Assembly: GCA_977017575.1 (NCBI GenBank)
Contig: CDRNVI010000099.1
Location: forward strand, 124,001-188,000
Direction: 5' to 3'
DNA length: 64,000 nucleotides
Source: Paramoeba atlantica
Lineage: Eukaryota > Protista > Discosea
Within the stretch, counting starts at the first letter, position 1. Every line of letters starts with the position of its first letter. The position numbers and the translations under genes are program-made. Shown one piece after another: positions 5,468 to 46,312 of the stretch. Under the pieces are notes generated by a model. The model saw nothing but the letters and a program-made list of their open reading frames with translations. It was not told where the DNA came from and did not search any database.

Positions 5468-5495
5468 TAGTACTGGAGCGGTAGAAGCTTTATGT

Positions 5496-7746: not shown

Positions 7747-8029
7747 TTACATAATGAAACAACCCCCACGCCTTTCTGTGTCAGATTTGATTTTCGTGTC
7801 CCTAATACACAAGGAGCGAGTCCCTACTACAACGCCGCGCGGCAGTGTATTCGTGTTATATGTTCCTCGTAGGTTGACATTGTGATGTAAAAAAAGCTCG
7901 TGGATGCCGCACGGAAGATGCTCAAAGTGTAAAGCCAGTTGAGAGTCATTCCAAGAAAAACTCATGTGAGTCAAGGATCTGGGCATCTCTATGAAATCCA
8001 AGGTTCCTGAAAACGTGTTGAAAGCCATA
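7747..8029 (-). pseudogene. 3' half of LRR gene split by retrotransposon copy A
   Basis: MAFNTFSGTLDF..LHFEHLPCGIHELFL..IRDTKIKS, collinear with the paralogue at 36530-37156; joins 16851..17227 as RLN|MAFN. Confidence 0.85.
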
Positions 8030-9502
8030 TATATGTTATCATGTAGAAAATATTCTACAGAGATTAGACGGTGAATATGGGAGTTCCATATTACGCGCAC
8101 AAAACGCGTTGAAATCACCTGACAGTCAGCGACTCATTCCTCAGAACTAACCTCCATCCACTGTTTGTTCTCGCGGTGCTGGAAAATTATGAAACTTCCC
8201 CGAAGAGCGCTAGTCGTCATATTTCGGCGACACACTGCAACCGCTTCTTCATTTCCCATGAAGAGAGAGTTGAGCGTTCGGGCCGACATATGCAGTTTGC
8301 CTCTCGCTCCCACCTCGAAGACGAGTGGGAATGTGGTAGGATGGTCGAGTTTTCTAGAGTGATATAAACTCGTGTACTTTTCTATTTTGCGCTCGTGCGC
8401 GAACTCAAAGTTCTCCTCCCAAGGGCAGGTAAGTTCTATAATGTATTCTTCTCCGTTAGATAGTTTCACCCATCCGTCAGGACGTAGCTCAGTATCAAGG
8501 TTCGTGAGCCACGCGGTGGTGGAGCGGAAGTGGGGGAGATCGAAGTGACATTGACTAGTGGAGGAGAATCGTTGTACGGAGTTCGCTAATGCCTGTAGTA
8601 CCATGTTATGCCGCAGGGCATACCTCCCTTGTTCGAGTGATTTCCTACAACCAGATAGAATATGCCGCGTAGTTTGTGTCTCGGTGTCACAGATGGGACA
8701 TTTATCGCTCGCATGTGTCAATACGCCCCACCTACGAAGAGACGCCCTGGTTGGGAGCGGCGTCTCGGTAAGCACTGAGGATGTGAACCGCGAAAGTGAT
8801 TCACTCTTAAGGCTACATAGGGCGGCGGCGAAGTCTCTCGCAAGGTCTGCTTCCGTTGCGATTCTGAACCATCGTCCTGCTACGGCAGTACGCCGTTGGA
8901 CGGCTTCCGTGAGGTGTCGCTCGTATTCGCTTCCAAGGAGTCTTCGGACGTTACTATGGCTTGTACTGTGCATATCCGTCGGCGGGCGAATGTATCCTGC
9001 TCTCCTTTTGTTCGCTTCTCGACTGATGCGCTCACATAAAGCGTGCTGGACCTCGGGATCACGCGATTTATCCATTTGTTCCATTGTCTCCACAGTGGAA
9101 AGAAGCCAAAGTTTTGACAGACTCATGAGATTCCAGCCATGCTCTGAATAGAGCAGCTCACTAGGTGCTGATTTCGCTACGTTTAACCATTTCCGAATTT
9201 CGCGTGTGGGGCATCGCTGTAGCCGAAGTACGTAATTGAAGGTAAGGCATGAGTTCACGACGAAGGAATACCGCAGACGAGAGATGATACCGTTATTGTA
9301 TATCCACAGGCGCGCGGGAAGGTCATGTGCGCTGGAAGATATATTACGCAACCAGGCTCGCAGACGGGTTCGTAGTTTTAGAAAGAGTGTCTTGCCTTGT
9401 TGAGCACCGGGTGCGAGCGTCATGCCTAAAAATGTGCTACCATTATCACATATGTGTGGGATAGGTGACGTGCCGATCATGATCTGTGGTCGGCGTGTCA
9501 TA

Positions 9503-10277
9503 CAGGGGTGCAAATCAGATGCTGGGGGGGTCTAAAATTAACAATGTTTGCGCAATTTTGGAAAATGATAGCGCATTCGAGAGCTCTCGCAGAGATCTAT
9601 GTATTTGGATAGGCGGTTTCCCGGGGTGTAAGGGGGTGGTCAACTGAGGAGAAGCCCAAAAAGGTCAAAATGCAAAAAATGAAGGAAAATTTTTGTACGT
9701 TCAATAATTACAACTTTCACCTTTTTGTTTCTACTACTATGTCGAAACGCCGTGGCATGCTGTTTAAAGTGTTTATGAGCATGTCATGACCATCTGTTTT
9801 AATGTAATCAACCGCCGTTTCAATAGAACATCCCCGGTTTCCTCAAATCGCTTAACCCACAACTTAACATGCTGTCGTGGACGCCTTGTCTTTGGCAAGT
9901 GGCACTGTAGGAGTTTGTATTCTCGTAATCTTTAACCAGAAGCATCCTGTGTGAATATTTTGTGTGCCCCGGGGGTTCATGTGATCTATCAGATAAGCCT
10001 TTACTGTTTTGCTTAGAGCGGGATTGCTTTTGCGGCATAATAGTGAGCTGAAAAACAAAAAAACACGGAAAAAACTGCAAAAATTGAAAAATCTGCAAAT
10101 TTTAGGGGGGTAAAAAAGCTTTAAAAAAAATATTTTTTTCGAATTTGTTTTCTTTTAACGTGATAATAGCGCCAAAACATAGATCTCTGCGAGAGCTCTC
10201 GAATGCGCTATTATTTTCCAAAATTGTGCAAACATTGCTAATTTTAGACCCCCCCCAGCATCTGATTTGCACCCCTG
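9503..10277 (-). mobile_element. internally deleted Tc1-like element inserted in the RT of copy A
   Basis: About 100-bp TIRs starting CAGGGGTG, TA duplication (9501-02, 10278-79); removing it restores the DSGYMTRR frame. Retains a transposase N-terminus (MPQK..PGH..RMLLV) homologous to 14296..15423. Confidence 0.9.
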
Positions 10278-12473
10278 TATATCCAGAGTCTTGCGTCATC
10301 GCCATGTGTTGCAGCCGGCATTTTTTCACGTTTAGTTTCATCCCAATATCGCTTAGAACTTTGACGAGTGCGTTTGTAGCATTCTGCATTTCCTGGGGGG
10401 TATTTGTCAGAGTAGTGAGGTCATCTGCGAAGGCTTTTAGAAAAATTTCTTTCGCATTCCACGTGATCCTGTGTTCGGGGCAACTTGAACTGACAAAACG
10501 CAGAATTAGCTCAATCGCCAAGTTGAATAAAATAGGCGAAAGCGTATCTCCCTGCAATACGCCACGACCTATCTCAATAGACTTCGTGAGTCCCTCTGCA
10601 CATTTGTACATTTGTATAGACGCTCGTTCGTACAACGCTTTGATGTAGTTAATGAGGATCGGTGAGACGCGCGCCCATTTTAAGGCCTGAAATAAAATTG
10701 TATGGGGTATGGATCCAAACGCGTTTTTGATATCAAACTGGGCAAGCACGTATTGCCTTTTGTGGCGCCGCTGGTGCTCGAGGATCTCGCAAAGAACCTG
10801 GGTGTGCTTAACTGTCCCATTCATATGCGGCAAGAAGCCTTTTTGTATTGTTGTATCCAGGGCATTGGAATCCAGGGAATGCTGAAGGATACGGTGACTT
10901 AGGATTGAGTGGAAAAGCTTCCCAATGCAGCTAGTCAAGCTTATCGGCCGCTAGTTTTCCATACTTGAGGTGGGGCCCCCTTTGTGGATAAGTCGAGTGA
11001 CCGCAGTTTTCCAGGTTGGAGGGCATACACCAAATTTTAGGACATCATTAAACACCTGTGCCATGTGAGTAAAGAGAGGGGCGCAGCGCTTTAGCAGCGC
11101 GTTCGATACAGTGTCCGAGCCTGGGGCAGCCCCAGAGCGTTTGGATGCGACGGCTGCTGGGATCATGTCTGAGTCAATATCTGACCATTGCATCTCATCA
11201 AGGGGATTTGGTTTCGTAAATTCTGCGGGAGGAATCTTGTGTATCTCTTCTGGTCTAGACATTGAGCCCACAAAGAATCTTTCAACCTCCTGTACAGGAA
11301 CTGTAGGGTAGGACGTCCCAGTTTCTGAGGTAGATGGGTCGACGCGATCTAAGCATTCGCGCGCGGCTGTCCAGGGATTTCGCTGGAATCGCGTAAGAGC
11401 CCACCGTCGACCGATTTCTTTCCTCTGCATACTGGATTCTTCCATGTACTGTTTTAGTGCCTTTTCGGCTTCCTTTATTTCCCCTCGTTGCTTGTTTCTC
11501 GCAGGACCCACCAACCATGAACGTTAACGCACGTTTAAGTTGTCGAACGTGTTGACTGAGTACTTTCACTGTGCGTTCAATGGCTAAGGGTCGTGATTTT
11601 CTTCTGGCTCTGCCAGTTCTGGTCCGTATAAGAAAGCCGTGCGTCGGATCGTTTTCCCGTGCGGCCTCGAATGCAGTTACAGCGAGGATTGCTGAGAGTA
11701 TTTCAGCTTGCGACAGGGCGTCCTCTTTGTTTCGCGCCAGGTGGATGTACGAGTTGCAGCGCTCCTCGATCTTCGCAATAATACTCTCCCACTGTTCCTC
11801 TGTGAAACGGACTAGAACGCGACCTCCATTTATTGTGCGGAATGTTTCGAGTAGGTTCTGCAGTACAGGGAGAGGTCGGGTAGCCGGGATTTGCCGGACA
11901 CGAGGGATGCGCTGCAATATCGTGTGTTCGCAGTTTCCTTCTGGTGGGGGAGGTAAAGGTAAAGGCAGAGGCGTGGGATTTGTTGCGGACTGCACAAGGG
12001 GTAAAGAAGGTGAGGAGCGGCGTACAGAAGGAGAATCATGTTGCGGGGCGTGGACAAGTGGTGCATTCCGCCAAGGCTCAGTATTGAACTCGAGCGATTC
12101 GACGGGTTGGTGTGAACTGGGGGGTAGGTTGATGCGCGTGGAGGGGGCGGTAGTGAAGCTTTTGCGGCGCGTTCCGCATCACCCATTGCAGGGCACAGTA
12201 TATTTCTCGTGGTCCAGCATGTGGCAGAGTACGCTACTTCAGCGACTTTGAGGAGAACTCCTTTCTGGAAGCATTGATGTTTACATGTTGCCTTGTCCTT
12301 ACATTTATGAGCGCAGTTGCGACGAGGCGCTGTTGGGGCAGGGGTGTTGTTGTCATTGCTGGTGTGCAGGTCCGGAGAGGTACGGACGGGTTCGCGGAGT
12401 ACAACCTCCGTGCTAGATTGTATGACACCATTTTTGCAACATCGATGCTTGCACTGAGCTTTGTTGCTACATA

Positions 12474-13180
12474 CAGGGGTGTAAATTTGGATGTGGGGGG
12501 GGTCTAAAATTTGTAAAACTTAGCCAATTTTGGAAAATAATAGCGCATTCGAGAGCTCCCGAACAGGGCTCATGAACGTAACAAGGCCGAACTATGCACA
12601 AGGGGGTATTGCCCCCTAGACAAAGCGCCCCCTAAAGCTATTTGCAACTTTCTAAAACAATAGCAAATATCGAAAAAAAAAATTATAATTGCTATTATCG
12701 TCGATTAATCCCAATCACAATACAGCATCGCTTTCGAAAGCTCTTCATGGCATTTTCATGGGCCTTGAAACGCTGCTTCGATCGCAATGATCAAATCTGC
12801 ACTATTCCGAGGGGCTCAACCATTTTTGGAGTCGCCCACTATGGAACATGATTTTTTAGCGCGAAAAAGATTGTGTTGTTTCGTAATCAGCAACAAGAAC
12901 CATGCACCAGCTTGCTTTTACGTGCCCAGGCGAAGAATAAACCCTTTCGTAGTCTTTGTGTTCGGGTGATGGCCCACAACCCCATCTTTGTAGCATTAAT
13001 CAGGGGAGAAATCAGAAAAACTGTGAAAAATGCAAAATTTTCCCTCCCAAAAAACTAAGTTTTTTTACGTGCACTCGAAATTCTAATTAACGCAGATGCC
13101 GTACATGCACGTTCATGAGCCCAGTTCGAGAGCTCTCGAATGCGCTATAATTTTCCAAAATTGGCCAAGTTTTACAAAAT
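12474..13180 (-). mobile_element. deleted Tc1-like element with truncated right TIR
   Basis: TA|CAGGGGTGTAAATTTGG left end; internal pieces homologous to both ends of the 14296 transposase; right TIR breaks off at about 13180. Confidence 0.85.
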
Positions 13181-14087
13181 AAAAACGTTAGCGCACGTTT
13201 AAGTTGTCGAACGTGTTGACTGAGTACTTTCACTGTGCGTTCAATGGCTAATGGTCGTGAGTTTCTTCGGGCTCTGCCAGTTCTGGTCCGTATAAGAAAG
13301 CCGTGCGTCGGATCGTTTTCCCGTGCGGCCTCGAATGCAGTTACAGCGAGGATTGCTGAGAGTATTTCAGCTTGCGACAGGGCGTCCTCTTTGTTTCGCG
13401 CCAGGTGGATATACGAGTTGCAGCGTTCCTCGATCTTCGCAACCATACTCTCCCACTGTTCCTCTGTGAAACGGACTAGAACGCGACCTCCATTTATTGT
13501 GCGGAATGTTTCGAGTAGGTTCTGCAGTTCAGGGAGAGGTCGGGTAGCCGGGACTTGCCGGGCACGAGGGATGCGCTGCAATATCGTGTGTTCGCAGTTT
13601 CCTTCTGGTGGGGGAGGTAAAGGTAAGGGCAGAGGCGTGGGATCTGTTGCGGACTGCACAAGGGGTAAAGAAGGTGAGGAGCGGCGTACAGAAGGGGAAT
13701 CGTGTTGTGGGGCGTGGACAAGTGGTGCATTCCGCCAGGGCTCAGTATTGGACTCGAGCGATTCGAGGGGTTGGTGTGAACTGGGGGGTAGGTTGTTGCG
13801 CGTGGAGGGGGCGGTAGTGAAGCTTTTGCGGCGCGTTCCGCATCACCCATTGCAGGGCACAGTATATTTCTCGTGGTCCAGCATTTGGCAGAGTACGCTA
13901 CTTCAGCGACTTTGAGGAGAACTCCTTTCTGGCAGCATTGATGTTTACATGTTGCCTTGTCCTTACATTTATGAGCGCAGTTGCGACGAGGCGCTGTTGG
14001 GGCAGGGGTGTTGTTGTCATTGCTGGTGTGCAGGTCTGGAGAGGTACGGACGGGTTCGCGGAGTACAACCTCCTTTGTTGCTACATA
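13181..14087 (-). repeat. tandem duplicate of part of retrotransposon A (homologous to about 11520-12473)
   Basis: ORFs 13235..13915 and 11571..12251 are near-identical; the second copy lacks about 50 bp before the Tc1 insertion site. Confidence 0.9.
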
Positions 14088-15640
14088 CAGGGGTGTAAAT
14101 TTGGATGTGGGGGGGGTCTAAATTTTGTAAAACTTGGTCAATTTTGGAAAATAATAGCGCATTCGAGAGCTCTCGAACAGGGCTCATGAACGTAACAAGG
14201 CCGAACTAGGCACAAAGGGGTATTGCCCCCTCGACAAAGAGCCCCCAAACGCTATTTGCAACTTTCTAAAGCACGGGAAAAAATAGAAAAAAAAATTAAT
14301 AATTGCAGTTTCCGCCGTTCTTTTCAATCACAATACGGCATCGCTTACGAAAGCTCTTCATAGCGTTTTCAGAGGCTATAGAATGTGTCGTTTGAAGATC
14401 TTGAAACGCTGCTTCGATCGCAATGAGCAAATCTGTACGATTTCTAGGGGCCAAACCATTTTTGAAATTGTCCATTATGGACCATAAATTTTCAACGGGC
14501 ATGAGATCAGGTGATTTTGCTGGCCAAGGAAGAACAGTAATTCCTGTCTCTTGAAAGCTTGTCCTGGCCAGATTGTGCACCGTACAGTTATCCATTGCAA
14601 TAACGCTAGAACGGTGCCGCTTAAGGTAAGAAATTAACCCTCCACGCTTCTTCATGGCTTCATCAAAAATAGCGCCCGTCACTGTACCTCGGTTTCCTTG
14701 AGAACGAACAGAAGGAAAAACGTGAAGGTGAAACCCATGCTTAAGGCTCGCTGCCATCCAAACCATAACACCATTCCCCCCATGCCATGCATCCAATTCA
14801 CCTTGCTGCTCCTTGGGAGCGTGAGTTTTGCGGCAGAGGTACGTGATGTGCCCCCCACTCTTCCCACAAGTAAATTTTTTTTCATCCATCCAAATGATAT
14901 TGGACAGTTCCGCGTCACTCCACGTTAGCATTTCTTCACAGAAACGTACTCGTTTCTCTTTATGCACTGAGGTAAGTGCAGGGGATTTCCGGACTGTGCG
15001 CAAAACGATGCCATGTGATTTCATGTGGGTCGTCAAAGTTTGACGAGAGCAAGTGAACCCAAGATTTTCCATTAACCGGTGGAGCTCACTCCAGCTCCTG
15101 ATGCCATAGGGTTGATCTCGAACACCCTCGTCTATAGCTTTCAAAGCAGCCTCACGTAGTTCAGGTGTCACAGCGATGTTCGTTGGGGCGTGTTTCTGGT
15201 TCTTGGAGTCTACTTCTCCAGTATCACGATAGCGCTCCACCCAGCGCTTCACAGTAGCTTCATGAACTTGAAAATTGCGTGCGGTTAGGGAAAAAGACTG
15301 TGTTGCTTCGTAATCGGCAACAAGAAGCATGCGCCAGGTTGCTTTTATGTGCCCAGGCGAGGAATAAGCCCTTTCGGAGTGCTTATGTTTCGGAGATCGT
15401 CCACAATCCCGTCGTTGTGGCATGAATAAGGGCAAAAAACAGAAAAATTGTGAAAATTGCAGGATTTCGTCTTCCAAAAAACTAAGTTTTTTTGTGTGCA
15501 TTCGAAAATCTAATTAACACGGATACGGTATATGCACGTTCATGAGCCCTGTTCGAGATCTCTCGAATGCGCTATTATTTTCCAAAAATAGCCAAATTTT
15601 ACAAATTTTAGATCCCCCCACATCCAAATTTACACCCCTG
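14088..15640 (-). mobile_element. apparently intact Tc1-like transposon
   Basis: About 105-bp TIRs (CAGGGGTGTAAATTTGGATG...CATGAACGT), TA TSD at 14086-87 and 15641-42, uninterrupted transposase ORF. Confidence 0.95.
14296..15423 (-). CDS. Tc1/IS630-family transposase (DD32E)
   Basis: MPQRR start at 15423; HTH-like region (LTARNFQVHEATVKRWV); WMDE, MDN and WPAKSPDLMPVE motifs. Confidence 0.9.
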   Translation of the reverse strand: MPQRRDCGRSPKHKHSERAYSSPGHIKATWRMLLVADYEATQSFSLTARNFQVHEATVKRWVERYRDTGEVDSKNQKHAPTNIAVTPELREAALKAIDEGVRDQPYGIRSWSELHRLMENLGFTCSRQTLTTHMKSHGIVLRTVRKSPALTSVHKEKRVRFCEEMLTWSDAELSNIIWMDEKKFTCGKSGGHITYLCRKTHAPKEQQGELDAWHGGNGVMVWMAASLKHGFHLHVFPSVRSQGNRGTVTGAIFDEAMKKRGGLISYLKRHRSSVIAMDNCTVHNLARTSFQETGITVLPWPAKSPDLMPVENLWSIMDNFKNGLAPRNRTDLLIAIEAAFQDLQTTHSIASENAMKSFRKRCRIVIEKNGGNCNY

Positions 15641-16810
15641 TATGCGCCGACAGGGGCGATAATTGACTTCATTGGTTGATGTTTGTGTGTGGTGTGCGGC
15701 GTCATCCATGTATTCTAGTGAGGGCAGATTTGCGGTCGGGAGCTCCGGATCCCTGACCTCTTCGAAGTGTCCGATGTCTGGTGTGGTATGCTGATCGGTG
15801 TCTATGGATAAGTCTGCTGGTAGTGGACTACTTGCTCGAGCTATGGGTGGTTCCACGAGGGGTAGCACTGGTTGAGGACTACTTTGGGCATCTGTAATGG
15901 GGACCCCCACTTTGCAACACTTGTGCAGACAATTTCTTTTGTCGCGGCATGTGTGTTTGCACGGTCTTCTGTGAGAAGTAAGTGAGGGTTCCATAGGGGC
16001 AACGACCTCCGGAGAGGGAAGAGACACGCTAGGCGGAAGAGATCCCTCGTGTCGTACTTTGCAACATGCGTGGAGACACGATGTTTTGTCCCGGCATTTA
16101 TGAGCGCATGGGGCACGTGGTTCGGAAGCGTGTTTTGAGGCATATGATGGCGGTGACACCTTGTAAGAGTCATCTCGGATCCTATAGGGTGCGCCGTAGG
16201 TGATCTCTGGGTGACCCCGTAGTAGTTCAATGGGTTGTATTTTTCGAGTTACGTGTGTGATTTGGAATTTTCGTAATCCTGGGATGTCACTACCACATAG
16301 TTTCTTTGTGACCGCTTTACCGAGCGCGTTCGAAGAGGAGTACACTGCGTTAAGCTGCATGAACGAATCCATGTAGGCGGAACTCCACCTGGCGTGACAA
16401 AACGTGCGACTTCGGTTTCCCGTTTCTTGGTATTTTAGGTGTTCACATGCGTTGTTTTCAATGACATCTTGAATTGTACACGATGTGATTATCAGACCAT
16501 CACTTCTTTTGCTTTCCGACTTCAAGGATTTGCCGATCGAGACTTCAACCATGTGGACACTCGAGAAGAACTCTCGTTCTGTGAGGGCAATGGCTGCGGC
16601 ATGCGTGTCTGGGAAATATGACCATGTGACGCTGTCTGAGGGGCGGATTTTGACGGGCATCGCTCGACTTTGGATGAAGTGAAAGCTCTGGGGATGTCGC
16701 TGCGCGCTGACAGGTCCTCCAGGGGGGCCGTCGTGTGCGATGGGAGCCGGTGAGGTGACATTGGAGGCCATGCTTCGGAAGATAAAGTTAGTACAAAATT
16801 GAAAATAATT

Positions 16811-16836
16811 CAACAAGTTACAGAAACTGTATCTTT
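16811..16836 (-). other. spliced-leader-like relic at 5' end of copy A
   Basis: AAAGATACAGTTTCTGTAACTTGTTG; contains most of the ACAGTTTCTGTAC core conserved in kinetoplastid/diplonemid SL exons. Confidence 0.8.
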
Positions 16837-16850
16837 ATGAGACGCTATCT

Positions 16851-17227
16851 TTAAGACGCTGCAGATCCCTGGGTAATGTGTCTAACCTGACTTCGCCCAT
16901 GAGATCGTTTGAGTAAAGTTCCAACGCAAGTACGGTTACGAGCAAATGTTCCCAACGTAGCGTACCTCGTAGATTGCCTCCCCGGATAATGTGAGAGTAT
17001 GTTTCGCATGCCGAGTTCATATCGTGCCAATCGATCCTTTCAACATTTTGTGCATCATTGCAACGTACTCCGTACCACTCACACGCTGGAGTCAAAGTGG
17101 TTTTGAAATTACTACTCGACGGAAGTGAAACGTTTTCAAGAAATTGAAGTAACAGAATTTCAGCTGGAAGACGTGCATTCATACGCCCCAGACGTAGCGG
17201 TGTCGTATCCGCGTTTCGCACAAACAT
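16851..17227 (-). pseudogene. 5' half of LRR gene split by copy A
   Basis: MFVRNADTTPLRLGRMNARLP..TPACEWYGVRC..LPRDLQRL; near-identical in design to 36530..37156. Confidence 0.85.
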
Positions 17228-18012
17228 TACGTAGGTGTGCAAGGAAAAGGAATAACGTTTTTCGTAAAAAGGAACAATAATTTTTGAAAACTCTGAACAA
17301 TAATCTGAATGTAACGACCAAAACAAATTGTATTGAATGACAACTGAACGCATATTGAAACATTCTCGTGCACCTAATAGTGACCTGCACGAAATATAAC
17401 TTGTTCTATAATACATGTATCCTAAAAAACGAATTGTAGACCACAAATATAGAATTAAATCTTAATAAGATATAAAAATTATATAAAAGACTTATAATTT
17501 TCAGAAAGAAAAGAAAAATATAAGGGTAAAAGAAAACATCAAATCGATTAGAGGATTGATTGTCTAAATCTTCTGGAATGTTCTAAAATTTCTTCCTCTT
17601 CAGAATCTTCTTTCTCGTCTTCCGCAAAATGAAAAATCAGTTCTTCTTCGGCGTACAGTATATAAATAGAATATAGAAACAAACTGACAGTGATGTTATC
17701 ACTGTAAATTAAATTTGTAACTAATTTCCAGCAAAAAGATAAAGCACAAAAAATATGTACACGTATTGTTTTCATAGATAGTGCTTGAACCTCAATAATA
17801 GTACCATAATAAATTAGTTTTTGTACAGTTTTTGTAGTTTTACGGACCTCTGAATTATTGTGTGATATAATCAGACAAAAGTTTTTTTCTTCGAAAAAAA
17901 TAGAAATGCGCAAAAAAAGTAGTTTGTGTATAGCGCGCCAAAAAGTAACATATTTACAGTTTCTGAAGTTTTTGAACCCGTGATCGAAAGCCGGCGGTAC
18001 ATTATCACTGAG

Positions 18013-19892: not shown

Positions 19893-19952
19893 TAAAATAA
19901 TGAATAGATATGAAGAGAAATATAGATTTCAATGTTCACTTTTTGAAACACT

Positions 19953-22900
19953 ATGTGTTTATTCAATGCAGAATCATGTTTAGATCTGCAGAGGTAAATT
20001 TCTACCTATGCTACGGTCGCATACGACGACCCCGCATAGGCTGTTTTACTAGCCTAGCCGCCCCCTTTCCAGTCGGGTGATTCCCGGTTTAGCCAAATAA
20101 CAAAGCTACTACGAATTGCTTCGCGTATGGCTTCAAGTTGGCATTCCGTGGACAGCCCTTTGTCACTCCCAAAAAGGCGGGCTACCTGCCGAAGAGAGGA
20201 AGCCGGCAATCCTCTTACACCCACCTCCATACACAGCAGATGTGTGTTCGGGTGATCCATCCTGCGGCGATGCAATATATTCTGATATTTTTCCGTTTTG
20301 CGGCAGTGTGCCTCCGCGATGTTGTCTTCCCAGGGTACGGTCAGTTCAACGATAAATTCAGTTCCATCGTGAAGCCTGACCAGGCCATCCGGACGCAGAG
20401 TGGTTTCTAGGGCTGCCCACCAACTTGGGAGGTTACGGAGGCCCTCGAGGTCGAATGAGGCCCAGGAGGTGTTGGGGGAGCCGACGATCGCGTTCGCAAG
20501 GACGCTCAACACTCTGTCATGTCGATACGTGTAGCGTCCTTGGTCTAAGGATGTCCTGCAACCTGAGAGCAGGTGCCTTAAGGTTTCGGGTGCTGAGTTG
20601 CAGATACGGCAAGACATACTATTTGCACCATTCTTCCCCCATGTTCTGAGCATGGTCCGGGTAGGAAGTGGGGCTTGGACCATCACATGTGTAGCGAATC
20701 TGCTCAGTGAAGTGCTCCTAAGGCCGTTAATGGCAGCTGCAAAATCTTTCGCCTGATCTTCCTCCGTGTTCGTGTCCCACCACTGTATGGCAACCGTGGT
20801 GCGGCGTCGCAGAGCGTTAATCATACGCTCCTCGTTCAGGTCAATGAGAGTTTTCCTGGCGCGAGATCGGTCGTTCAAGCAGTGCGTTATGTGAGTTGCG
20901 GGCCGTATTTGTCCTTTCAAGCGTCTCTCCTCTTCTTCCCGTATTTTGTTCCGAAGCACAGCTGCGGCAGCCGGATCTTTGGATTTCTTTAACTGGCACA
21001 TAAGGTCTGCAGTACATTCATGCCACAGTTGCGACAGGCTCCTCAGTCCCCAGCCGCGCGATGAGTAAATTGCTTCGGGACTAGAGCCACGCGCCACGTT
21101 AATCCAACGCCGCAGGAAGTTGGTACAGAGTTTCTGGAGTCGGAGGACAAAGTTCATAGTGATGCACGGGTGGATCGTAAGCGAGAAGCGCAAGCGGGAG
21201 ATAATGGCATGCTGATATATCCATAGTCGCGAAGGGAGGTCGTGGGCGCTCTTATCGATATTTCTGAGCCATGAATTAATGAGAGGACGTAGCTTCATGA
21301 ACAGCGCACGGGACTGTTGTGCTCCAGGGGCGATGGTCATGCCCAGAAAGGTGCTACCTGCATCACAGATTTGGGGAATGGGAATGTGATTGATCAGAAT
21401 TTGTGGACGGCGTGTCATGTAACCTGGGTGTTCATCGTCCGGTCGCACGGCCATGCATTGTACCCTACTCTTTTTCACGTTTATAGATAAACCTATTTTG
21501 CGGAGGATTGAGTATAGGGCTCCTAGTGCGACTCCTTCGGGTTGCTGGTGAGGACCGTGAGATCGTCAGCGTAGGCCTTTATAAAGCATTTCGCATTGCC
21601 TGGCAGATCGAGTCCGTACGCGGGAAAGTTAAGTGTCATATAACGCAGTACTACTTCCATGACGATAAGGAATATAGACGGGGAGAGGGTGTCGCCTTGG
21701 AGTACCCCACGTTGCACAGGAATTGTAGAGGAGAGACCTTCATAACACTTTATTTGCGTAGACGCTCCGTTATATAAACTACTGATGTACCCGAGGAGAG
21801 TCGGGGAGATCTTGGCCCATTGCATCGCCTCAAATATAACATTGTGTGGGACTGAACCGAATGCGTTGGATAGATCCAGTTGGGCTAAGCAGTATTGGAG
21901 CTTGTTCTTTCTGTAGTGCTGCAAGATTGCATCCAGCGTCTGAGTGTGTTCCAGTGTCCCGTTGATGGCCGGTAGGAAACCCTTTTGGATTGATGGATCA
22001 ATTACTGCTGCCTCGACCAGATGGCGGTTTATTTTGCGACTTATGATCGAATGGAGAAGCTTAGCTAGAACACTGATGAGACTGATGGGGCGCCAGTTTT
22101 GGGGTTGATCGTGAGCTCCATTTTTATGAATTAGGCGGGTAACAGAGCATTTCCAGGAAGGTGGGCAAGTGCGATACTTGAGCAACGCGTTGAAGACTGT
22201 AGCGATGTGTGAGTGTACGCTGTGACACCGTTTTAGGATGGTATACGTGATGGTGTCTTGACCTGGGGCACTACTATTCCTTTTCGAGATTAGAGCGTCG
22301 GATATTTCGGTCGGGGTCAGCTCTTCCCATGACATGTCGACAAGAGGACGGGTCCCAAGCGAGTCAGACGGAGGAATGTGGTATTCCTCTGAAGGAGCAG
22401 AAAGTGTATCACCAAAGTGCTTTTCCACGCTGTGCACATCGCATGTAGGATAGGAGGCTGGGGCTTCAAGACCGATAGGTTTGTCCAATGTTTCGCTAGC
22501 GGCGGTCCATGGGTTTCTGTTAAAGCGTTTCAGTGCCCGGCGTTGTTCGAGTGTTTGCCGCTGTGCGGTGGCCTCCGCATGATAAACCCTTTCACCTTTT
22601 TTGGTTTCCTTGATCGTTCGTTTTAAGGCGTTCCTGTCTGCCTTTCCATGTGTATAGCGTAGTCTTGTCTGCAGTTCTTTTAGGTGCCGGGAGAAGGACG
22701 AGGCTATTTTTTCGCTTTCCAAGGGTCTGCATCGGGTCTTTGCGTGACCTTTCTTTGTGCGGATTAAAAAGCCTTTCGTGGGATTCACGTCGCGAGCAAC
22801 CTCGTAGGTAGAGACAGATAGTATGGAGCTCAGGAGTTCGGCGTTCCTAACGGCGGAATCTATGTCTTGTTCAGGAGTGAGTAATGCACTACACCTTTTG

Positions 22901-25576
22901 AGAGCCTTGGTCTCAACGTCGTGCCACTGTGCGTCCGTTAAGTTGATACATATCTTTCCCCCTTGGATGTACCTGGCTGTTCGGAGTAGGTAATCGAGAT
23001 CCTGTTCTTTATACTCCTGCAGGTCTGGTGGAACCGCCGAGCGAGGTACTTTGGATTCCTGGGCAGAGCTGGTCTCGGCGGCAGTGGAACCTGCAGTTGG
23101 AGGAGCAGCGGGACCGAAGACTTTACAGCAACGATGAGCACACCCGAGTTTGTCGCGGCAGGTGTGGCGGCAGGGTTGTGCAAAGGATTGCAAAGAGGGT
23201 ACACGACTGGGTGGGTCTGCTATGCGATATGCTGGAAGCTCCGGAATAGCTTCTAAGACCGGCGGAGTTTCGTCGATGGGTGTGTGTCGATGTAGGGTTA
23301 TCACATGATCTGCAAGCCCGGGAATTTCGGAGCCGTTTAGTCTCTTAAGAACGGCTTTACTGAGAGTACCCGGAGAGGAATAGTAATCTGAAAGTTTTAG
23401 GGCTGCATCCTGGTACAGAGATACCCAACTGGAGTGGCGCGAAGACTTGTCCGGGCTTCCGACTTTGTGAATTGTAATGAAATCGCACGCCCCATGGTCC
23501 ATCAGTTCTTCTACGGAACATCCTCTTACTATGATGTCGTGCGTGGGGTTGCCAGAGTTCAGCGCCTTCGAAATGGCTGCCTGCGCTCCCTGCAGGGAGC
23601 TAATCCTGCTGCGTGTGATTTGACTTTCGCAGGCAGCTCGTACGTCCGGAAAATATAACCATTCTTGGGCACTTGCTAGACGAAGTTTCAGAGGCTTTGA
23701 TCGGGATTGTATAAAATGTAGGCATTGTTTCCCTTTCTCTGTCGAGCGACGTCTTTCTACAGGGACCCCCGAATTCCCAGAAGGCACGTCGTGAGGGACC
23801 TTCTCGAATACCCATTCCGGAACTTCGTCGTCCGCAGTGCAGAGAGGGAACGGTGGTTCTGTCAAGAGTCCTTCTGAGTCGTCGGTATGGTGGGGTGACT
23901 TTATACGATTAATAAGTAGTTTCTCTACGCCGCGGCGTGTGGGACTAGGCGTGAACGAGACGTTCCAGGACTCCGGCACTATCGAAAGATTCTGTGGCGG
24001 CGATAAAGGGGCAGGGAGGTACGGGACTTTCTCTGCTTTGGAGTTGTCGGAAGTGTCCACCCCTGCGTCGTGCTCGGGCGTGCTGCTGGGATGGTCGCGA
24101 TATGGTTCATCAGTTATCCGGTCTGGGGGGTGCTTTTCGGTATCAGAGGAAGAGATACGTGCGGGTGACGATGTTGTGATGCCAGGGGTAAGCCCTCTTT
24201 TGCAGCAAAGGTGGCCACACGTGGTTTTGTCCTTACAGGGATGTTTACATGGTAGATTGTATGGGTTCTGAGGCTCTGGTTCGGGCTGTCGAGCGCTGAG
24301 GCGCAATGTCGGTCCTTCCTGCAGCTTTTCTATAGCGAATTCGGGAGGTTCTCGCTTGGGAGATAGTTGGGACCCTCGGTTTACGGTCTTGGGAGTCATC
24401 TTTCTGAGAGGCGGTGGTTTCGCTCGTGCTTCCGGGGGAGGGATGCCAAGGAGGCCTTTACATAATTCATACGCAAGATTGATAGCTGTTGAGGAGATAG
24501 TATGTTGTTTTCCTTCCGGAGGAGAAGAAGGGGATTTCCGAAAGGTGGGCACCTTACTTGCTTCACGCTGATCAGCTCTGTTGGCATGCGTTGTAGCAGG
24601 GTTGTCGCTGTTTGATCTTGCGATTCCTGGGGCAATCAATTTTCTCTTCGCCGACATTTCTCCCTCGACGTGTTTCCTTGAGCGTTCGTAGTGGTTGGAG
24701 CCCTCGCTTGTGGATCTGCCGCTGGGTGAAAACACTTCCGTGTTCGAGGAGTTCTGCGCAGTTTGGGGTTTGCCCGCACATTGAAATATGGGCTTGGTCA
24801 AGTGGCGCAGTACTTTCACCATAAAGCCCCCAGAGTCTCCTGCCAGATTTTGACTCCCATTGTCGCGCGTACTGCTTTGTGGATCTAGTCTAGGTGCACT
24901 ACCGGCGCTCGTACAAGTGGTGTGGAGGTGACGTTTACAACAGGGGTGCCCGCAGTTCGCCTTATCCTTGCAGATATGTTTGCACGGGGCGATAGGTTCA
25001 GGTACATCCTTTACTACTTCAGATGATGGGGCTTCAGAGGACATTGTGTTTGTTTCCGTCCTCCTCGTTACATCGGTAACAGTATTCCCTTGGGATACAT
25101 GTGTGGTACTATCTTCGGGAACACAGGTAGGAAGAAGATGTCGTTTACAACATGGGTGGCCGCACAGACTCTTGTCTTTGCAGGGATGCTTGCATTGTGA
25201 AATGTTAAGGGGCTGAGTGGACGGCGGATTCGGCGCAGTCTTGCAGCAGGGATGGCCGCATTTTTTTTTTGCTCCTTACAAGTATGTTTACATCGCCGGG
25301 TCGTATTTATTGCGGTTTCCTTCTTTTCAGTGTTTGTTTTCAGTGAACCTCCCATAGGAGCTTTGGGGCTGACTCGGTAGGAGTCTGCATGTTGAGCTGC
25401 ATGTTCCTTGGCCTCGCGTTCAGCACCTGTCAGAGAGGTGGCGGATCGGCTAGTTACGTTGCCTAGTCTCTTATGAGAGTCCTGCAACGCCTGTGAGATT
25501 TCCCCACTTCTGGCATATGGCGAGGTCATGAAGGGTCGTAAACGTAGGGGAAAATAAAGACAACAAGGTACAGAAA
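19953..25576 (-). mobile_element. RLE-type non-LTR retrotransposon copy C (second subfamily, full length, two frameshifts)
   Basis: Partial SL relic 25561-76; ATG at 25529; five CxHxC..CxHxCCK fingers; RT (WRPISL, QGDTLSP, YADD); CRIC..H..C, RH, RPDG..VELTVPWE. Frameshifts at about 25265 (A-run) and about 21520. Confidence 0.9.
25561..25576 (-). other. partial SL-like relic at 5' end of copy C
   Basis: TTTCTGTACCTTGTTG, about 30 nt upstream of the element ATG; identical to the 3' 16 nt of the relic at 33918. Confidence 0.7.
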
Positions 25577-25642
25577 TGTGGTATAAAAAAACCAGGTACA
25601 TCACGAAGATCGAGACCTCCCGTAAACTTGTTACAGGAAATA
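25577..25642 (-). pseudogene. LRR fragment stranded between copies B and C
   Basis: Encodes ISCNKFTGGLDLRDVP; continues the LRR frame broken at 30397 (VIN|ISCN). Confidence 0.75.
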
Positions 25643-28600
25643 TATTGCATCATACAGGTAATCCTGCAGAGATTTATGTGGTGAAAACGCGCACAAAACG
25701 CGTTTTAGTCACCTGTTTATATCCAGCGTCACCAAGAACGTTCTCCTCCATCCAATTTTTGTCATTGCGGTTTTGATATACTATGAAGCTCCCTCTCAGA
25801 GCCTTCACGGTCATATTGCGCCGGCACTCAGCCACCAGCTCATCATTACCCATAAATAGAGAGTTCAGAGTTCGACCAGCACTGCTTATTTTTCCTCTCG
25901 CTCCGACTTCGAAAACGAGTAGAAAAGTACTCGGGTTTGTGAGCTTGCGGGAATAGTAGAGATTTGTGTACTTGGCAGTTTTTCGTTCGTGTGCGTAGAC
26001 AAAATTTTCCTCCCAGGGGCACGTCAATTCTATAATATACTCCTCCCCGTTGGACAGTTTCACCCACCCATCCGGTCGCAGCTCGGTGTCGAGTTCCGTG
26101 AGCCACGGAGGGGTAGAGCGAAAGTGAGGGAGGTCAAAGTGATATAGACTGGTCCCTTGGAATTTCTGCACAGAGTTTGCGAGGGCTTGTAGCACCATGT
26201 TATGTCGCAGAGTATATCGTCCTTGCTCGAGTGCTTTTCTACACTCGGAGAGAATATGTCGCGCAGTTTGCGTTTCAGTATCGCAGATGGGACACTTGTC
26301 GCTTGTTTGTGTCGATACGCCCCATTTGCGGAGAGACACTCTAGTGGGGAGTGGCGTTTCTGTGAGTACGGAAGCCGTAAATCGTGATAGCGATTCGCTT
26401 TTGAGATTACATAGGGCGGCAGCGAAGTCCCTCGCGAGGTCTGCTTCCGTCGCTACGCGGAACCATCTTCCCGCAACTGAAGTGCGCCTTTGCACGGTTT
26501 CCGAAAGATGCCTCTCATATTCACTGTCGGGAAGTCGTCGTACGTTATTGTGAGTTGAACCGAGTATGTCAGTCGGCGGACGAATGTACCACGCTTTTCT
26601 CTTGTTTTCTTCTCTCCTGATGCGTTCGCGCAGGGCGTGCTGGACATCGGGATCGCGTGATTTCTCCATTTGTTCCGCGGCGCTCGCGGTTGAAAGAAGC
26701 CATAGTTTGGATAAGCTCACGAGGTTCCAACCATGCTCGGAATACAACAGTTCGCTTGTCGCGGATTTTGCTACATTTAACCATTTTCTGATTTCATTTG
26801 TAGCGCATCGCTGGAGGCGCAGAACGTGGTTAAAAGTCAGACATGAATTGACAACAAAAGAGTAGCGAAGGCGGGAGATAATACCATTATTGTATATCCA
26901 TAGTCGGGCGGGTAGGTCGTGGGCGCTGGAAGATATGTTGCGTAACCAGGTACGGAGTCGATTGCGTAGCTTTAGGAACAGAATTTTACCATGCTGGGCA
27001 CCAGATGCGAGAGTCATACCCAGGAATGTGCTACCATTATCGCATATTTGAGGAATAGGTGTTGCGTCAATCATTATCTGCGGTCGTCTTGTCATGTAGC
27101 CTGAGTCTTGAGTCATTGCCATGTGTTGAATCCGACATTTCTTTGCGTTCAATTTCATTCCGATATCGCCTAGAACTTTGACCAGTACGTTCGTGGCAAT
27201 TTGCATTTCCTTTGGTGTGTTCGTGAGTATACTGAGGTCGTCAGCAAAGGCCTTCAGAATGGTTTCCTTTCCATCCCAAGTGATTCCGTACTGTCGGCAA
27301 CTTGAACGGATGAAGCGAAGAATCAATTCCATTGCCAAGTTGAATAAGATCGGCGACAGTGTATCTCCTTGTAATACTCCACGGCCGATCTCGATCGACT
27401 TCGTAAGGCCTTCAGCACACTTGATTTGAATAGATGCTCCTTTGTACAGCGCGCTGATATAGTTAATTAGAATTGGGGAGACACGGGCCCATTTTAGGGA
27501 TTGCAACAGTACTGCGTGGGGGATAGATCCGAAAGCGTTCTTGATATCGAACTGTGCCAGTAAGTATTGCCGTTTGTGACGTCGTTGGTGTTCAAGGAGC
27601 TCGCATAAGACTTGTGTATGCTCGACGGTCCCATTCATGTGTGGTAGAAATCCTTTTTGTACTGATGTATCGAGCGCATGAGAATCCAGGGAATGTTGAA
27701 GGATTCGGTGGCTCAGCATTGAATGGAAAAGTTTCCCTATGCAACTAGTTAAGCTTATCGGTCGCCAATTCTCCATAGTTGATGTAGGACCTCCTTTGTG
27801 TATGAGGCGAGTTACGGCAGATTTCCAGGTGGGGGGGCAAATCCCGAATTTAAGGATATCATTGAATACTTGAGCGATGTGGACAAAGATAGGGCTACAA
27901 CGCTTGAGCAGAGCGTTAGATACAGTGTCTGATCCAGGAGCAGCGCCCGAGCGCTTGGAAGATACAGCAGATGCTATCATTTCGGCGTCAATATCCGACC
28001 ATGGCATGTCGATGTCAGGCCGTGGTCCCAAGAACTCGGCGGGGGGTATGCTGTGATTCTCTTCAGGTTTGTAGATTTGATTCAGGTCTGTAGATTGGCA
28101 TCCTCCACGTACAACTTCAACGCTTTCTCTGCTTCCTTAATTTCTCCTCGCTGCTTGTTTCTCGCGGCCCCTTCATGAAGGTAAGTGCACGTTTGAGTTG
28201 ACGAATATGTGTGCGAAGCCTCTTCGTGGTACGTTCCATGGCCAAGGGCCGTGAGTTCCTTCTGGCTCTGCCAGCTCTGGTTCGCAGGAGAAAGCCGTGT
28301 GACGGGTCGCTCTCCCGTGCGGCTTCAAAGACGGTTACGGCGAGGATCGCGGATAATGTTTTAGCTTGAGACAGGGCATCCTCATCGTTTCGCGCTGGGT
28401 GCACGTACAAGTTGCAACGTTCCTCAATTTTCGCAATAACATTGCCCCACTGTTCCTCTGTAAAACGTACCAGAACTCGTCCTCCCGTTATTGTGTCAAA
28501 TGTTTCGAGAAGATTCTGCAGGTCAGGAATGGGCTGAATGGTTGGGGCTGGGGCGTGCTGGGCTCGAGGGATCCTCTGCAGTATCGTGCGTCTGCGATTT

Positions 28601-30396: not shown

Positions 30397-30873
30397 TGAT
30401 CACTCCAATATCAGTTGGTAAATGTGTCAAAACTAACCCTCCAGTAAACATGTTTCCACTGACATCCAAGTGGTATAGTCTAGCCGGCAAGTTAACTAGG
30501 CTCAAACCCCCCGTAAATGTGTTATTCGTTGCTTTAAAATATTCAATGTATTCGTGAAGTTTGAGCATACCATTGAATCGATTATCTGAAAAATCAGCTT
30601 CCTGAAGTCCTTGTTCCCAAAACAAATTCTCCAGATCCAAAGTTCCTACGAGGGCGTTCTCCTGAACTAAAAGGCGTGTAAGACTGTTCGGCAAATTATT
30701 GAGGAGTAATTTCCCCGAAAATGATTGCAGGAGGCATCGAATATCTCCATGTGAACCGGAAGAAAACGAAGGTCCAAGTCCAGCTCGGAGTAATCTTTGC
30801 TTGAATACGTCATGTGCGGAATTCGCGGCGTATAAGAAACTGTACAGCCCGTGAACGCGTTAGAACTTAAATA
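30397..30873 (-). pseudogene. middle part of a shattered LRR gene
   Basis: YLSSNAFTG..LDLRFLPVHMEIFDASCNHF..LPNSLTRLLVQENALVG..LPARLYHLDVSGNMFTG..LPTDIGVI. Confidence 0.8.
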
Positions 30874-31276
30874 TTTTGTTTATCATGCGCTCTTTGGCGC
30901 AGAGATAATCCCCTTAATGCGACGGCCGAAATCATCGGCACATAATCCGCCCACAACGGATGTCGCCAAAGGGGGTTCGACGCGGACTCTGTCGGTAGAG
31001 AGGTCCAGGCAACTCGCCTCTCTTTACGCAGCCGGAGGGGCGTACTGCAACCGACTCGGTCCCAGTCGGTAGAGGTGGTCCAGGCAACTCACCACCTCTT
31101 TACGCAGCCGGAGGGGCGCACTGCAACCGACCGCTGCCTCGCGATAATGCGAGGCAGAGTCACGCCCAGTGGTCCTCAAGGGAGGCCACCATGGCGCATA
31201 GCTCCCGGGAAGAGATAGGCGCGAGAAGAAGAAAGCCGGGGAGGGAAGAAAACTCACTCAAGGAGTGAGCCGGGGA

Positions 31277-33768: not shown

Positions 33769-33917
33769 AGCCGGGGAGGGGTGAAAAGTCGGAAGTACGT
33801 CCCCTACTTCCACGACAAAGAGGGACAGTTCCCGCTAGCCGTCAGCCGGAAACGGGCATTAAAAGGGAAAATGTATGCCCGTTTCCGGGAAAAGAAAGGA
33901 AGGGCTAGCAAAATGTA

Positions 33918-33943
33918 CAACAAGGTACAGAAACTGTATCTTT
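33918..33943 (-). other. spliced-leader-like relic
   Basis: AAAGATACAGTTTCTGTACCTTGTTG. Confidence 0.85.
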
Positions 33944-37156: not shown

Positions 37157-37315
37157 TACGTAGATGTGTAAGAAAAAATACTATTCTGTATAGAGAGGAT
37201 TCATAACATGAATGCAACGGTACTAAACGTTTTGTTAGCTTTTGCTTTGGTACGTTTACACATCGCCCTTATTGTTGTGCAAAATGTTTGCTCTACACAG
37301 GTCGAGCACCTTAGC

Positions 37316-46257: not shown

Positions 46258-46312
46258 GGGGGACAGGGGAGGGGGATGGGGGTGTGGAAGGGAATAGAGA
46301 GGGGAGGAAGAG

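What the first reader, a model, noticed from the sequence alone, without database searches (positions are those of the whole stretch)
8030..16850. Retroelements insert at the same codon of the LRR LxLxxN motif in three independent events
Seen, after removing the inserts: copy A restores CTT AA^T ATG GCT TTC AAC (L N M A F N); copy B restores ATC AA^T ATT TCC TGT AAC (I N I S C N); the SL-capped mini-element restores TTA TA^T TTA AGT TCT AAC (L Y L S S N). All cuts fall in the x codon between the two hydrophobic residues, with no clear TSD; junctions are ambiguous by about 2 nt because of AT microhomology. Established: RLE elements are often site-specific for multicopy RNA genes (R2-rDNA, NeSL/SLACS-SL). 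Inference: this family uses a protein-coding repeat family as its multicopy target, and may drive LRR turnover or shuffling.
Basis: partly seen in the sequence, partly recalled or inferred. Interest (0 to 1): 0.85.

Follow-up and report, generated by a model that had tools for sequence, protein, structure and literature searches.

The report
Jumping genes that target LRR codons
In this protist, a group of R2-like jumping genes and their small hitchhikers repeatedly land at one codon of the repeat unit of a large leucine-rich-repeat gene family, so a protein-coding repeat serves as their landing site the way ribosomal or spliced-leader RNA genes do for their relatives.

Summary

**Window events.** All three inserts are cut in at codon x5 of LxxLxLxxNxFxG, in sense orientation:
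- copy A, 8030-16850
- copy B, about 25640-30395
- the 3-kb SL-headed mini-element, about 30874-33943

The host frame resumes at L6, 9 nt before the Asn codon. Uninterrupted paralogs show the empty sites, with no duplication or deletion above 3 nt.

**The element.** It is an R2-like LINE with one 1561-aa ORF holding RT, a CCHC knuckle and a PD-(D/E)xK endonuclease. The endonuclease fold matches solved R2 proteins.

**Genome-wide (45.7 Mb).**
- 53 element 3' ends are followed in phase by the LRR Asn motif (control 0), about 40 of them independent.
- 12 of 32 classified insertions of the coding-type families sit at this site, and 7 of 8 full-length A/B copies do.
- Chance expectation is below 0.1%.
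- Elements of one family are 96-99% identical while their flanks cannot be aligned, so these are separate events.

**Limits.** Specificity is partial, about 6-40% by family. The claim about LRR "shuffling" is untested.

No paper in the searched library describes a protein-coding target for endonuclease-bearing LINEs of this type. The scan reached the same conclusion earlier on another piece of this genome (s1-377381, s1-377395).

The parts
8030..16850 (-). Copy A. This is a full-length family-A R2-like LINE carrying a spliced-leader (SL)-like 5' leader. It ends in a 3' hairpin plus (TA)n tail at 8030. It is interrupted by nested DNA transposons/MITEs (about 9502-10279, 12459-13183 and 14073-15650, the last holding a Tc1-type transposase ORF at 14296-15501). 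It also has an internal 0.9-kb duplication (11520-12409 = 13184-14073).
   Evidence: The haplotig/duplicate copy L001 lacks the nested inserts and has an intact 1561-aa ORF.
16851..17446 (-). 5' half of the LRR gene hit by copy A. It holds the N-terminal cap (CxWxGVxC) and the first repeats, and ends ...LPRDLQRL + AA of codon x5.
7750..8029 (-). 3' half of the same LRR gene. It resumes with the T of x5, then MAFNTFSGTLDF...
36509..37222 (-). Uninterrupted paralog of the copy-A host gene. The empty site reads CTT AA^C CTA TCA TGG AAT at 36793-36776.
   Evidence: 81-87% identity to both flanks of copy A.
25640..30395 (-). Copy B. This is a full-length family-B element, about 75% identical to A in nucleotides, with an SL-like leader at the 5' end and a hairpin plus ATATAT tail at the 3' end.
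30874..33943 (-). SL-headed non-autonomous 'mini' element. It has the same type of 3' hairpin (TGCGC...GCGCA) and an A-rich tail (AAACAAAATAT).
33944..34235 (-). Upstream piece of the LRR gene hit by the mini element and B. It ends ...LPNYLRHL + TA of x5.
30396..30873 (-). Middle piece of that LRR gene, running from L6 (TTA AGT TCT AAC) to ...LPTDIGVI + AA of x5.
25578..25639 (-). Downstream piece of that LRR gene (ISCNKFTGGLDLRDVPG). It is then cut by element D at a different phase.
19950..25577 (-). Element D, a more distant SL-headed RT element. Its 5' junction lies in the LRR gene, about 18 nt upstream of the canonical site, and its 3' flank is not LRR.
50960..55130 (+). Copy C, a 5'-truncated family-B copy with a rearranged tail. 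BLASTX finds no LRR in its flanks.

Best explanation
A superfamily of R2-like non-LTR retrotransposons integrates preferentially at one point of the plant-type LRR coding unit LxxLxLxxNxFxG. The members share three features: one ORF with N-terminal Cys/His fingers, RT, a CCHC knuckle and a PD-(D/E)xK restriction-like endonuclease; a 5' end carrying the 3' part of the host spliced leader; and a 3' end with a conserved hairpin between ATCTC and TGA(T/A). Non-autonomous derivatives that share the same ends use the same site.

The insertion point lies inside codon x5, just before the L6 codon and about 10 nt upstream of the conserved Asn codon. Insertions are always in the sense orientation.

Shown:
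- the site, the phase, the orientation and the independence of the events
- the genome-wide enrichment
- the endonuclease type
- near-blunt integration, with 0-3 nt of overlap

Inferred:
- The element protein reads DNA that the LRR consensus keeps constant (for example AAY NNN TTY NNN GG downstream, or YTN CCN upstream). The reading part is probably the N-terminal finger array, as in R2.
- The protein nicks the bottom strand at x5|L6.
- The RNA tail ((UA)n or A-rich) pairs with the few AT bases at the nick, and reverse transcription is primed from the target.
- The 5' junction forms by microhomology at the AAA of the leader.

The roughly 2,000-10,000 LRR units act as a redundant 'safe harbour'. 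The preference is strong for families A and B and for one mini family, and weak for others.
For: **Window junctions and empty sites.**

**Phase.** In 15 of 15 LRR-resident 3' junctions the host resumes at the L6 codon. No antisense LRR flank occurs among 37 unique flanks.

**Genome-wide counts.**
- 3' end followed by the Asn motif: 53 hits, control 0.
- Denominators: 55, 131 and 106.
- 12 of 32 classified family A-K insertions are at the site.
- 7 of 8 full-length A/B copies are at the site.

**Repeated hits on one gene at the same phase.**
- window gene: mini plus B
- L004: A plus mini2
- L011: H plus B
- L003: L plus A
- tandem pairs at one site in L005 and L010

**Independence.** Same-family elements are 96-99% identical with unalignable flanks. 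A 90%-identical paralog is empty at both sites.

**LRR family size.** 2,128 strict N-x-F-x-G-x-L-D matches against 62 for the control.

**Statistics.**, my calculation.

**Element type.**
- phmmer to R2Bm 8gh6, E 8.5e-34.
- Invariant C..C..H..C, RPD, E-L-T and K.
- The C-terminal model (pLDDT 91.7) matches R2Tg/R2Pm/R2Bm at E 1.6e-7 to 4e-5.

**3' hairpin.** Compensatory stems occur across families.

**Relative with another target.** A relative in another assembly sits in (GT)n on both sides, so targets differ between lineages, as expected for sequence-specific RLE LINEs.
Against: The preference is far from absolute.
- About 20 of 32 classified family A-K insertions are not in LRR DNA.
- Only about 2 of 36 exact 'mini' copies and about 10 of 95 mini' copies are followed by the motif.
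- Copy C and element D in the window are off-site.
- Four intact relatives fetched from a second assembly are not in LRR.

No recognition sequence could be separated from the LRR consensus itself. The target sample is small, and one search is conditioned on the motif.

No true empty allele of the same locus was recovered, only paralogs. No biochemical evidence exists for nicking or DNA binding.
Confidence: 0.85

Rival explanations
1. Generic AT-rich (WA^T) nick preference. Under this reading, LRR hits only reflect the density of LRR genes and of AAT/TAT codons in them.
For: For families A and B the junctions are AT-rich (AA^T AT., TA^T TT.) and overlap the (TA)n tail. Many off-target sites exist.
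Against: Only about 25% of sampled LRR units have AAT or TAT at x5. Even 2,500 such sites among millions of WAT sites give an expectation below 0.1% per insertion, against 37% observed (my calculation). Mini families with CATAAC, CATCAAAA or AAAACA tails land at the same phase in front of CTG, CTT and CTA codons. All hits are in the sense orientation.
Confidence: 0.03
2. One or a few ancient insertions were spread among LRR paralogs by gene duplication or gene conversion.
For: LRR genes are a large, recombining family. The assembly holds many duplicated contig pairs (A_W = L001, L009 = L010, and others).
Against: After removing haplotig pairs, same-family copies are 96-99% identical while the 250-nt flanks on both sides cannot be aligned. 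A paralog only 10% diverged is empty at both sites. At least 8 distinct element families occupy the site. Haplotig-specific extra insertions are present (L010 against L009).
Confidence: 0.03
3. Insertion is random and purifying selection does the rest. Only copies in dispensable LRR genes, and in the transcribed orientation, survive.
For: Disrupting one of thousands of LRR units is probably cheap. Sense orientation could help expression from polycistronic transcription (my inference).
Against: Selection cannot produce a single-nucleotide phase within a 69-nt repeat. Any position in the gene would be equally disruptive (15 of 15 in phase; p about 1e-20). Many copies persist outside LRR genes.
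Confidence: 0.04
4. Endonuclease-independent capture of cDNA at a recurrently broken or structured spot of LRR DNA.
For: No direct evidence. Near-blunt junctions and microhomology are also seen in break-repair insertions.
Against: The elements encode an intact R2-type endonuclease with all catalytic residues conserved. The 3' junctions are precise and family-specific. A relative is specific for (GT)n, which points to protein-determined targets.
Confidence: 0.03

Closest known systems
R2 elements (28S rDNA-specific RLE LINEs; solved structures 8gh6, 8ibw-z, 9dou, 9nl2-4)
   Same: Single ORF with N-terminal zinc fingers, RT, a CCHC knuckle and a C-terminal PD-(D/E)xK endonuclease. The sequence and fold matches are significant. 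Both integrate nearly blunt at a fixed point of a multicopy target, and both have a structured 3' end.
   Different: The target here is a protein-coding repeat rather than rDNA. The fingers are an unusual CxHxCx5CxHxCC array, and Pfam reports no Myb domain. A spliced-leader relic sits at the 5' end. Specificity is only partial.
CRE clade (SLACS, CZAR, CRE1/2) of kinetoplastids and NeSL of nematodes: spliced-leader-gene-specific RLE LINEs (PMC12278014, PMC4640811)
   Same: RLE LINEs of trans-splicing organisms that are associated with spliced-leader sequence and with a multicopy target.
   Different: Those elements sit inside SL RNA genes, with SL sequence on both sides. Here the SL piece is only a 5' leader on the element, and the flanks are LRR codons or other DNA. 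Clade placement by RT phylogeny was not done.
RHS (retrotransposon hot spot) genes of Trypanosoma, hit by ingi/RIME (Bringaud 2002, as cited in PMC7563717)
   Same: A protein-coding multigene family with one hot spot where LINEs and their non-autonomous partners insert repeatedly, producing pseudogenes split into two halves.
   Different: As far as I know, ingi/RIME are APE-type LINEs with target duplications. The RHS hot spot is one site per gene, not a site repeated in every unit of a tandem protein repeat.
Microsatellite- and small-RNA-gene-specific RLE LINEs (Togen (TG)n, Utopia U2, LIN tRNA/28S; PMC4640811)
   Same: Related lineages change targets. A relative of the present elements is embedded in (GT)n.
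   Different: All listed targets are non-coding repeats or RNA genes. The list holds no protein-coding target.

Membership tests
RLE-bearing (R2-supergroup) non-LTR retrotransposons | Reverse transcriptase domain of LINE type | tested here: met
   Pfam RVT_1 at E 1.9e-33. phmmer to R2Bm/R2Tg at E 1e-32 to 1e-34.
RLE-bearing (R2-supergroup) non-LTR retrotransposons | CCHC knuckle followed by a PD-(D/E)xK endonuclease, C-terminal to RT | tested here: met
   C15, C18, H27, C32, R87-P88-D89, E103, T105 and K119 are invariant in 14 relatives. The model (pLDDT 91.7) has the C-terminal part of the R2 proteins as its best PDB matches, E 1.6e-7.
RLE-bearing (R2-supergroup) non-LTR retrotransposons | Target-primed insertion signature: precise 3' junction, variable or truncated 5' ends, little or no target duplication | tested here: met
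   The 3' junctions are family-specific. 5'-truncated copies of 72-290 nt exist. Overlap is 0-3 nt against the empty paralogs.
RLE-bearing (R2-supergroup) non-LTR retrotransposons | Endonuclease nicks the target and the RT primes from the nick | not testable with these tools
   This needs purified protein and target DNA.
Site-specific LINE (target = LRR codon x5|L6) | Insertions concentrated at one sequence position far above chance | tested here: met
   53 hits against 0 for the control. 12 of 32 classified insertions are at the site. 15 of 15 are in phase.
Site-specific LINE (target = LRR codon x5|L6) | Most copies reside in the target, as for R2 in rDNA | tested here: inconclusive
   7 of 8 full-length A/B copies are in the target. 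The share is only 6-40% across all families and fragments.
CRE clade (SLACS/CZAR/CRE1/2) | Inserted at a fixed position inside spliced-leader RNA genes | tested here: not met
   The flanks are LRR codons or unrelated DNA. SL-like sequence occurs only at the element's 5' end.
CRE clade (SLACS/CZAR/CRE1/2) | RT groups with CRE in a phylogeny | not tested
The named hits were R2- and NeSL-like proteins.
Host target: plant-type LRR protein family | LRR repeats with an N-terminal cap | tested here: met
   For the L052 paralog: Pfam LRR_1 at 46.8 bits, LRR_4 at 39.7, LRR_6 at 35.9 and LRRNT_2 at cut-off. For window ORF 5496-6254: LRRNT_2 at E 2e-6.

The most novel reading that the evidence does not exclude
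An R2-like LINE lineage has evolved DNA recognition of a protein-coding consensus (the LRR unit). It uses thousands of codon-level copies of that motif as its genomic safe harbour. Sister lineages in the same organism read other targets, such as (GT)n. This would be the first restriction-like-endonuclease LINE with a protein-coding target, and a natural series of retargeted R2-type integrases.
Probability: 0.65. Interest if true: 0.8.

Novelty: new variant of a known kind. Interest (0 to 1): 0.72.

Why it matters
Published target lists for endonuclease-bearing site-specific LINEs contain rRNA, spliced-leader, tRNA and snRNA genes, transposons, microsatellites and telomeres (PMC4640811). They contain no protein-coding sequence.

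A family that homes to a fixed codon of a protein repeat matters for four reasons:
- It extends the 'multicopy safe harbour' idea to coding DNA.
- It supplies a steady source of pseudogenes, and possibly of turnover, in a large LRR (surface-protein-like) family.
- It gives a natural set of closely related R2-type enzymes with different targets. That is useful for learning how such enzymes are retargeted, a current aim of R2-based gene insertion work.
- It is a warning for annotating LRR genes in this genome, because many are split by these elements.

Tried and rejected
**Genome fetching.** The remaining junctions were therefore assessed only through hypothesis-driven pattern counts.

**Public runs.** Only short Logan contigs were available. 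They reproduce the paralog's empty site, with the break exactly at 30396, and the L009/L010-type junction in several samples. They give no true empty allele of the window loci and no RNA evidence.

**Relatives in a second assembly.** Four intact relatives were fetched from ERZ24900291. None is in LRR DNA, and one is in (GT)n. This argues for family-dependent targets rather than adding LRR cases.

**Copy C.** I tried reading its 3' flank as a frameshifted LRR unit. BLASTX gives no LRR support, so it is counted as off-target.

**Recognition motif.** I tried to separate a recognition motif from the LRR consensus. The samples (16 targets, 36 background units) are too small, and one search is conditioned on the motif.

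**Literature.** Searches for an LRR-targeting retroelement in kinetoplastids or elsewhere found nothing.

**Not resolved.** Clade placement (CRE, NeSL or R2) and the identity of the organism, which is coded.
Full report
**What is in the window**

Self-comparison and Pfam show several copies of one retroelement superfamily on the minus strand, set in an LRR-gene-rich stretch. BLASTX finds 5.6 kb of LRR-like sequence in the 64 kb.

- Copy A occupies 8030-16850. It is swollen by nested Tc1/mariner-type transposons and a 0.9-kb internal duplication.
- Copy B occupies about 25640-30395.
- A 3-kb non-coding element with the same kind of ends occupies about 30874-33943.
- Copy C (50960-55130, plus strand) is a 5'-truncated B-type copy.
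- Element D (about 19950-25577) is a more distant relative.

All carry at the 5' end the sequence ...(ATA)AAGATACAGTTTCTGTACCTTGTTG. Downstream of that point the families diverge completely. From my own knowledge, this sequence resembles the 3' half of kinetoplastid and diplonemid spliced leaders.

**Check of the observation**

| Event | Host before the insert | Host after the insert |
|---|---|---|
| A | ...LPRDLQRL, CTT AA | T ATG GCT TTC AAC (MAFNTFSGTLDF) |
| B | ...LPTDIGVI, ATC AA | T ATT TCC TGT AAC (ISCNKFTGGLDL) |
| mini | ...LPNYLRHL, TTA TA | T TTA AGT TCT AAC (LSSNAFTG) |

In each case the cut lies inside codon x5 of LxxLxLxxNxFxG, the insert is in the sense orientation, and the reading frame is kept.

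Uninterrupted paralogs supply the empty sites.
- Window 36509-37222 reads CTT AAC CTA TCA TGG AAT across the A site.
- L052 is 89-90% identical to the gene hit by the mini element and B. It is an intact LRR ORF, with Pfam LRR_1, LRR_4 and LRR_6 above cut-off.
- L052 reads straight through both sites.

Compared with these paralogs, the filled sites show 0-3 nt of overlap and no deletion.

**What the element is**

A duplicate of copy A on another contig (L001) lacks the nested transposons and has one open frame of 1561 aa. Its parts are:
- four to five CxHxCx5CxHxCC fingers in the N-terminal third
- an RT domain (RVT_1, E 1.9e-33)
- a C-terminal CCHC knuckle followed by RPD...ELT...K

The best solved relative by sequence is the Bombyx R2 protein (E 8.5e-34). 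The CCHC, PD, E and K positions are invariant in 14 relatives. A model of the last 202 residues (pLDDT 91.7) finds R2Tg, R2Pm and R2Bm as its seven significant PDB matches, followed by PD-(D/E)xK cap-snatching nucleases. This is therefore an R2-type LINE with a restriction-like endonuclease.

All families share a 3' signal: ATCTC, a 5-7-bp stem, a loop, the complementary stem, then TGA(T/A). The stems differ by compensatory changes: TGCAG/CTGCA, TGCGC/GCGCA, TGCAC/GTGCA, TACAGG/CCTGTA and TGTAGAA/TTCTACA. A family-specific tail follows: (TA)n, A-rich, CATAAC and others.

**Genome-wide test**

The window's genome (45.7 Mb, 248 contigs, many duplicated contig pairs) was searched with element ends and with patterns.

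*Families A-K.* The pattern for the 3' end of the families with a CAG/TAG stem gives 55 hits against 4 for the control.
- After removing duplicates, 32 insertions could be classified.
- 12 of them are at LRR x5|L6 and 20 are elsewhere.
- Of full-length A/B copies, 7 of 8 are at the site.

*Phase.* In a table of 16 independent LRR-site events, 15 have a readable downstream flank. All 15 resume at the L6 codon, 9 nt before the Asn codon. BLASTX finds no flank in the antisense orientation.

*Several hits per gene.* Several genes are hit more than once at the same phase, in different repeat units or in tandem at one unit:
- window gene: mini plus B
- L004: A plus a 0.7-kb mini
- L011: H plus B
- L003: L plus A
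- L005: A plus mini'
- L010: G plus B

*Direct hypothesis pattern.* The pattern joined any 3' hairpin, ATGA(T/A), 5-35 nt and AAY NNN TTN NNN GG. It gives 53 hits against 0 for the control. About 40 remain after I removed six haplotig pairs, three likely false hits and four of uncertain phase, all judged by eye.

| Family | At the site | Denominator | Source of denominator |
|---|---|---|---|
| mini (AAAGAGCGCATGAT) | about 2 | 36 | |
| mini' (...ATGAA) | about 10 | about 95 | |
| mini3 (CGCCACGAGCGTATGAT) | about 17 | about 45 | |
| mini2 (CACTATAAGTGCATGA) | about 10 | about 60 | |

*Expectation.* The genome holds 2,128 strict N-x-F-x-G-x-L-D units against 62 for the control. Even with 10,000-20,000 units, a random insertion would hit the site within 2 nt on the right strand at about 0.05-0.2%. 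That predicts fewer than one such hit among all 292 counted 3' ends, against about 40 observed (my calculation).

**Why it is not just AT preference**

Families A and B end in (TA)n. Their targets have AAT or TAT at x5 and ATN, TTN at L6, so microhomology plays a part.

Two facts point past AT preference.
- Only about 8% of sampled unhit units have WAT WT at x5-L6, and half have CTN at L6.
- The mini families with CATAAC(C), CATCAAAA or AAAACA tails land at the same phase in front of CTG, CTT, CTA, ATC and TTG codons alike.

What the events share is the position in the LRR unit.

**Why the events are independent**

Same-family copies are 96-99% identical over their terminal 600 nt. Their 250-nt flanks on either side cannot be aligned, apart from the obvious haplotig pairs.

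At least eight element families use the site. A paralog that differs by only 10% is empty at both sites. One haplotig carries an extra family-G element exactly at the 5' junction of a B copy that its partner lacks. Gene duplication or gene conversion of one old insertion does not fit these facts.

**Limits**

The preference is partial.
- Copy C and element D are off-site.
- Families E, F and G are mostly elsewhere.
- Some elements form tandem arrays, for example at 5,370-bp and 3,392-bp spacing.
- Four intact relatives from a second assembly of the same or a close organism are not in LRR DNA.

One of those relatives lies in (GT)n on both sides. That fits the known habit of RLE LINE lineages to switch targets (PMC4640811).

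I could not define which bases are read, I found no true empty allele, and I have no evidence for 'shuffling' of LRR genes.

**Comparison with what is known**

Kinetoplastid CRE-clade elements sit in spliced-leader genes (PMC12278014, PMC4728078).

The nearest analogue for a protein-coding family is the RHS hot spot for ingi/RIME in Trypanosoma (PMC7563717, citing Bringaud 2002). It involves a different class of LINE and one site per gene.

Searches of the held library found no report of LRR-targeting retroelements.

Within this scan, the same conclusion was reached earlier on another piece of this genome (s1-377381, s1-377395). The present work repeats it independently, with window-specific empty sites and genome-wide counts.

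**Verdict**

The main interpretation is supported as a strong but partial target preference. In kind, this is a new variant (new target class) of site-specific R2-like LINEs.

Noticed in passing
window 9502-10279, 12459-13183, 14073-15650; L003 and L006/L007 just after the family-A tail: Tc1/mariner-type DNA transposons and MITEs have inserted repeatedly into the retroelement body or directly into its terminal (TA)n tail. Their terminal repeats begin TACAGGGG... and contain GGGGGGGTCTAAAAT. One copy has a 401-aa transposase ORF at 14296-15501.
   Followed up: partly
L056 (ENA assembly ERZ24900291, contig ctg3877l), element 2924-7660: An intact relative is flanked on both sides by a long (GT)n microsatellite. 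Its ORF is 1501 aa and 41% identical to family A, and it has the same leader and hairpin design. This is a different target in the same superfamily.
   Followed up: partly
3' ends of all families, e.g. window 8036-8064, 25649-25673, 30882-30905 (minus strand): A conserved 3' hairpin lies between ATCTC and TGA(T/A). Its stems show compensatory changes across at least 12 families. It is a likely RT recognition signal shared by autonomous and non-autonomous elements.
   Followed up: partly
L009 vs L010 (two contigs, allelic); window copy A vs L001: Haplotig pairs differ by whole insertions. A family-G element is present only in L010, at the 5' junction of a B copy. The nested DNA transposons are present only in the window copy of A. 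Both point to recent activity.
   Followed up: partly
L009 5' junction; L019/L020 5' junction; window 16839-16850: The 5' junctions show short duplications that mix host and leader sequence, for example TTATGGYTTCT+ATAAAGATA twice and AAAGATAGAGGAA twice. Copy A alone carries 12 further leader-like bases (AGATAGCGTCTC). These look like template-jump or microhomology signatures.
   Followed up: no
genome contigs C44:23239-39373, C88:2778-9722, C11:1250-7105, C65:1243-11637: Some families form head-to-tail tandem arrays with constant spacing (5,370 bp, 3,392 bp, about 2.9 kb, about 5.2 kb). This inflates copy counts outside LRR genes.
   Followed up: no
window 46060-49300: A 3-kb array of 8/12-nt units is extremely G- and A-rich on the plus strand (GC skew up to 0.78). 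It lies just downstream of an ABC-transporter gene pair (37316-44362, minus strand).
   Followed up: no
window 6366-7577 (minus strand): A 403-aa ORF next to the copy-A host gene has no Pfam hit. It contains a C-x-C...H...C stretch and may be the tail of yet another mobile element.
   Followed up: no
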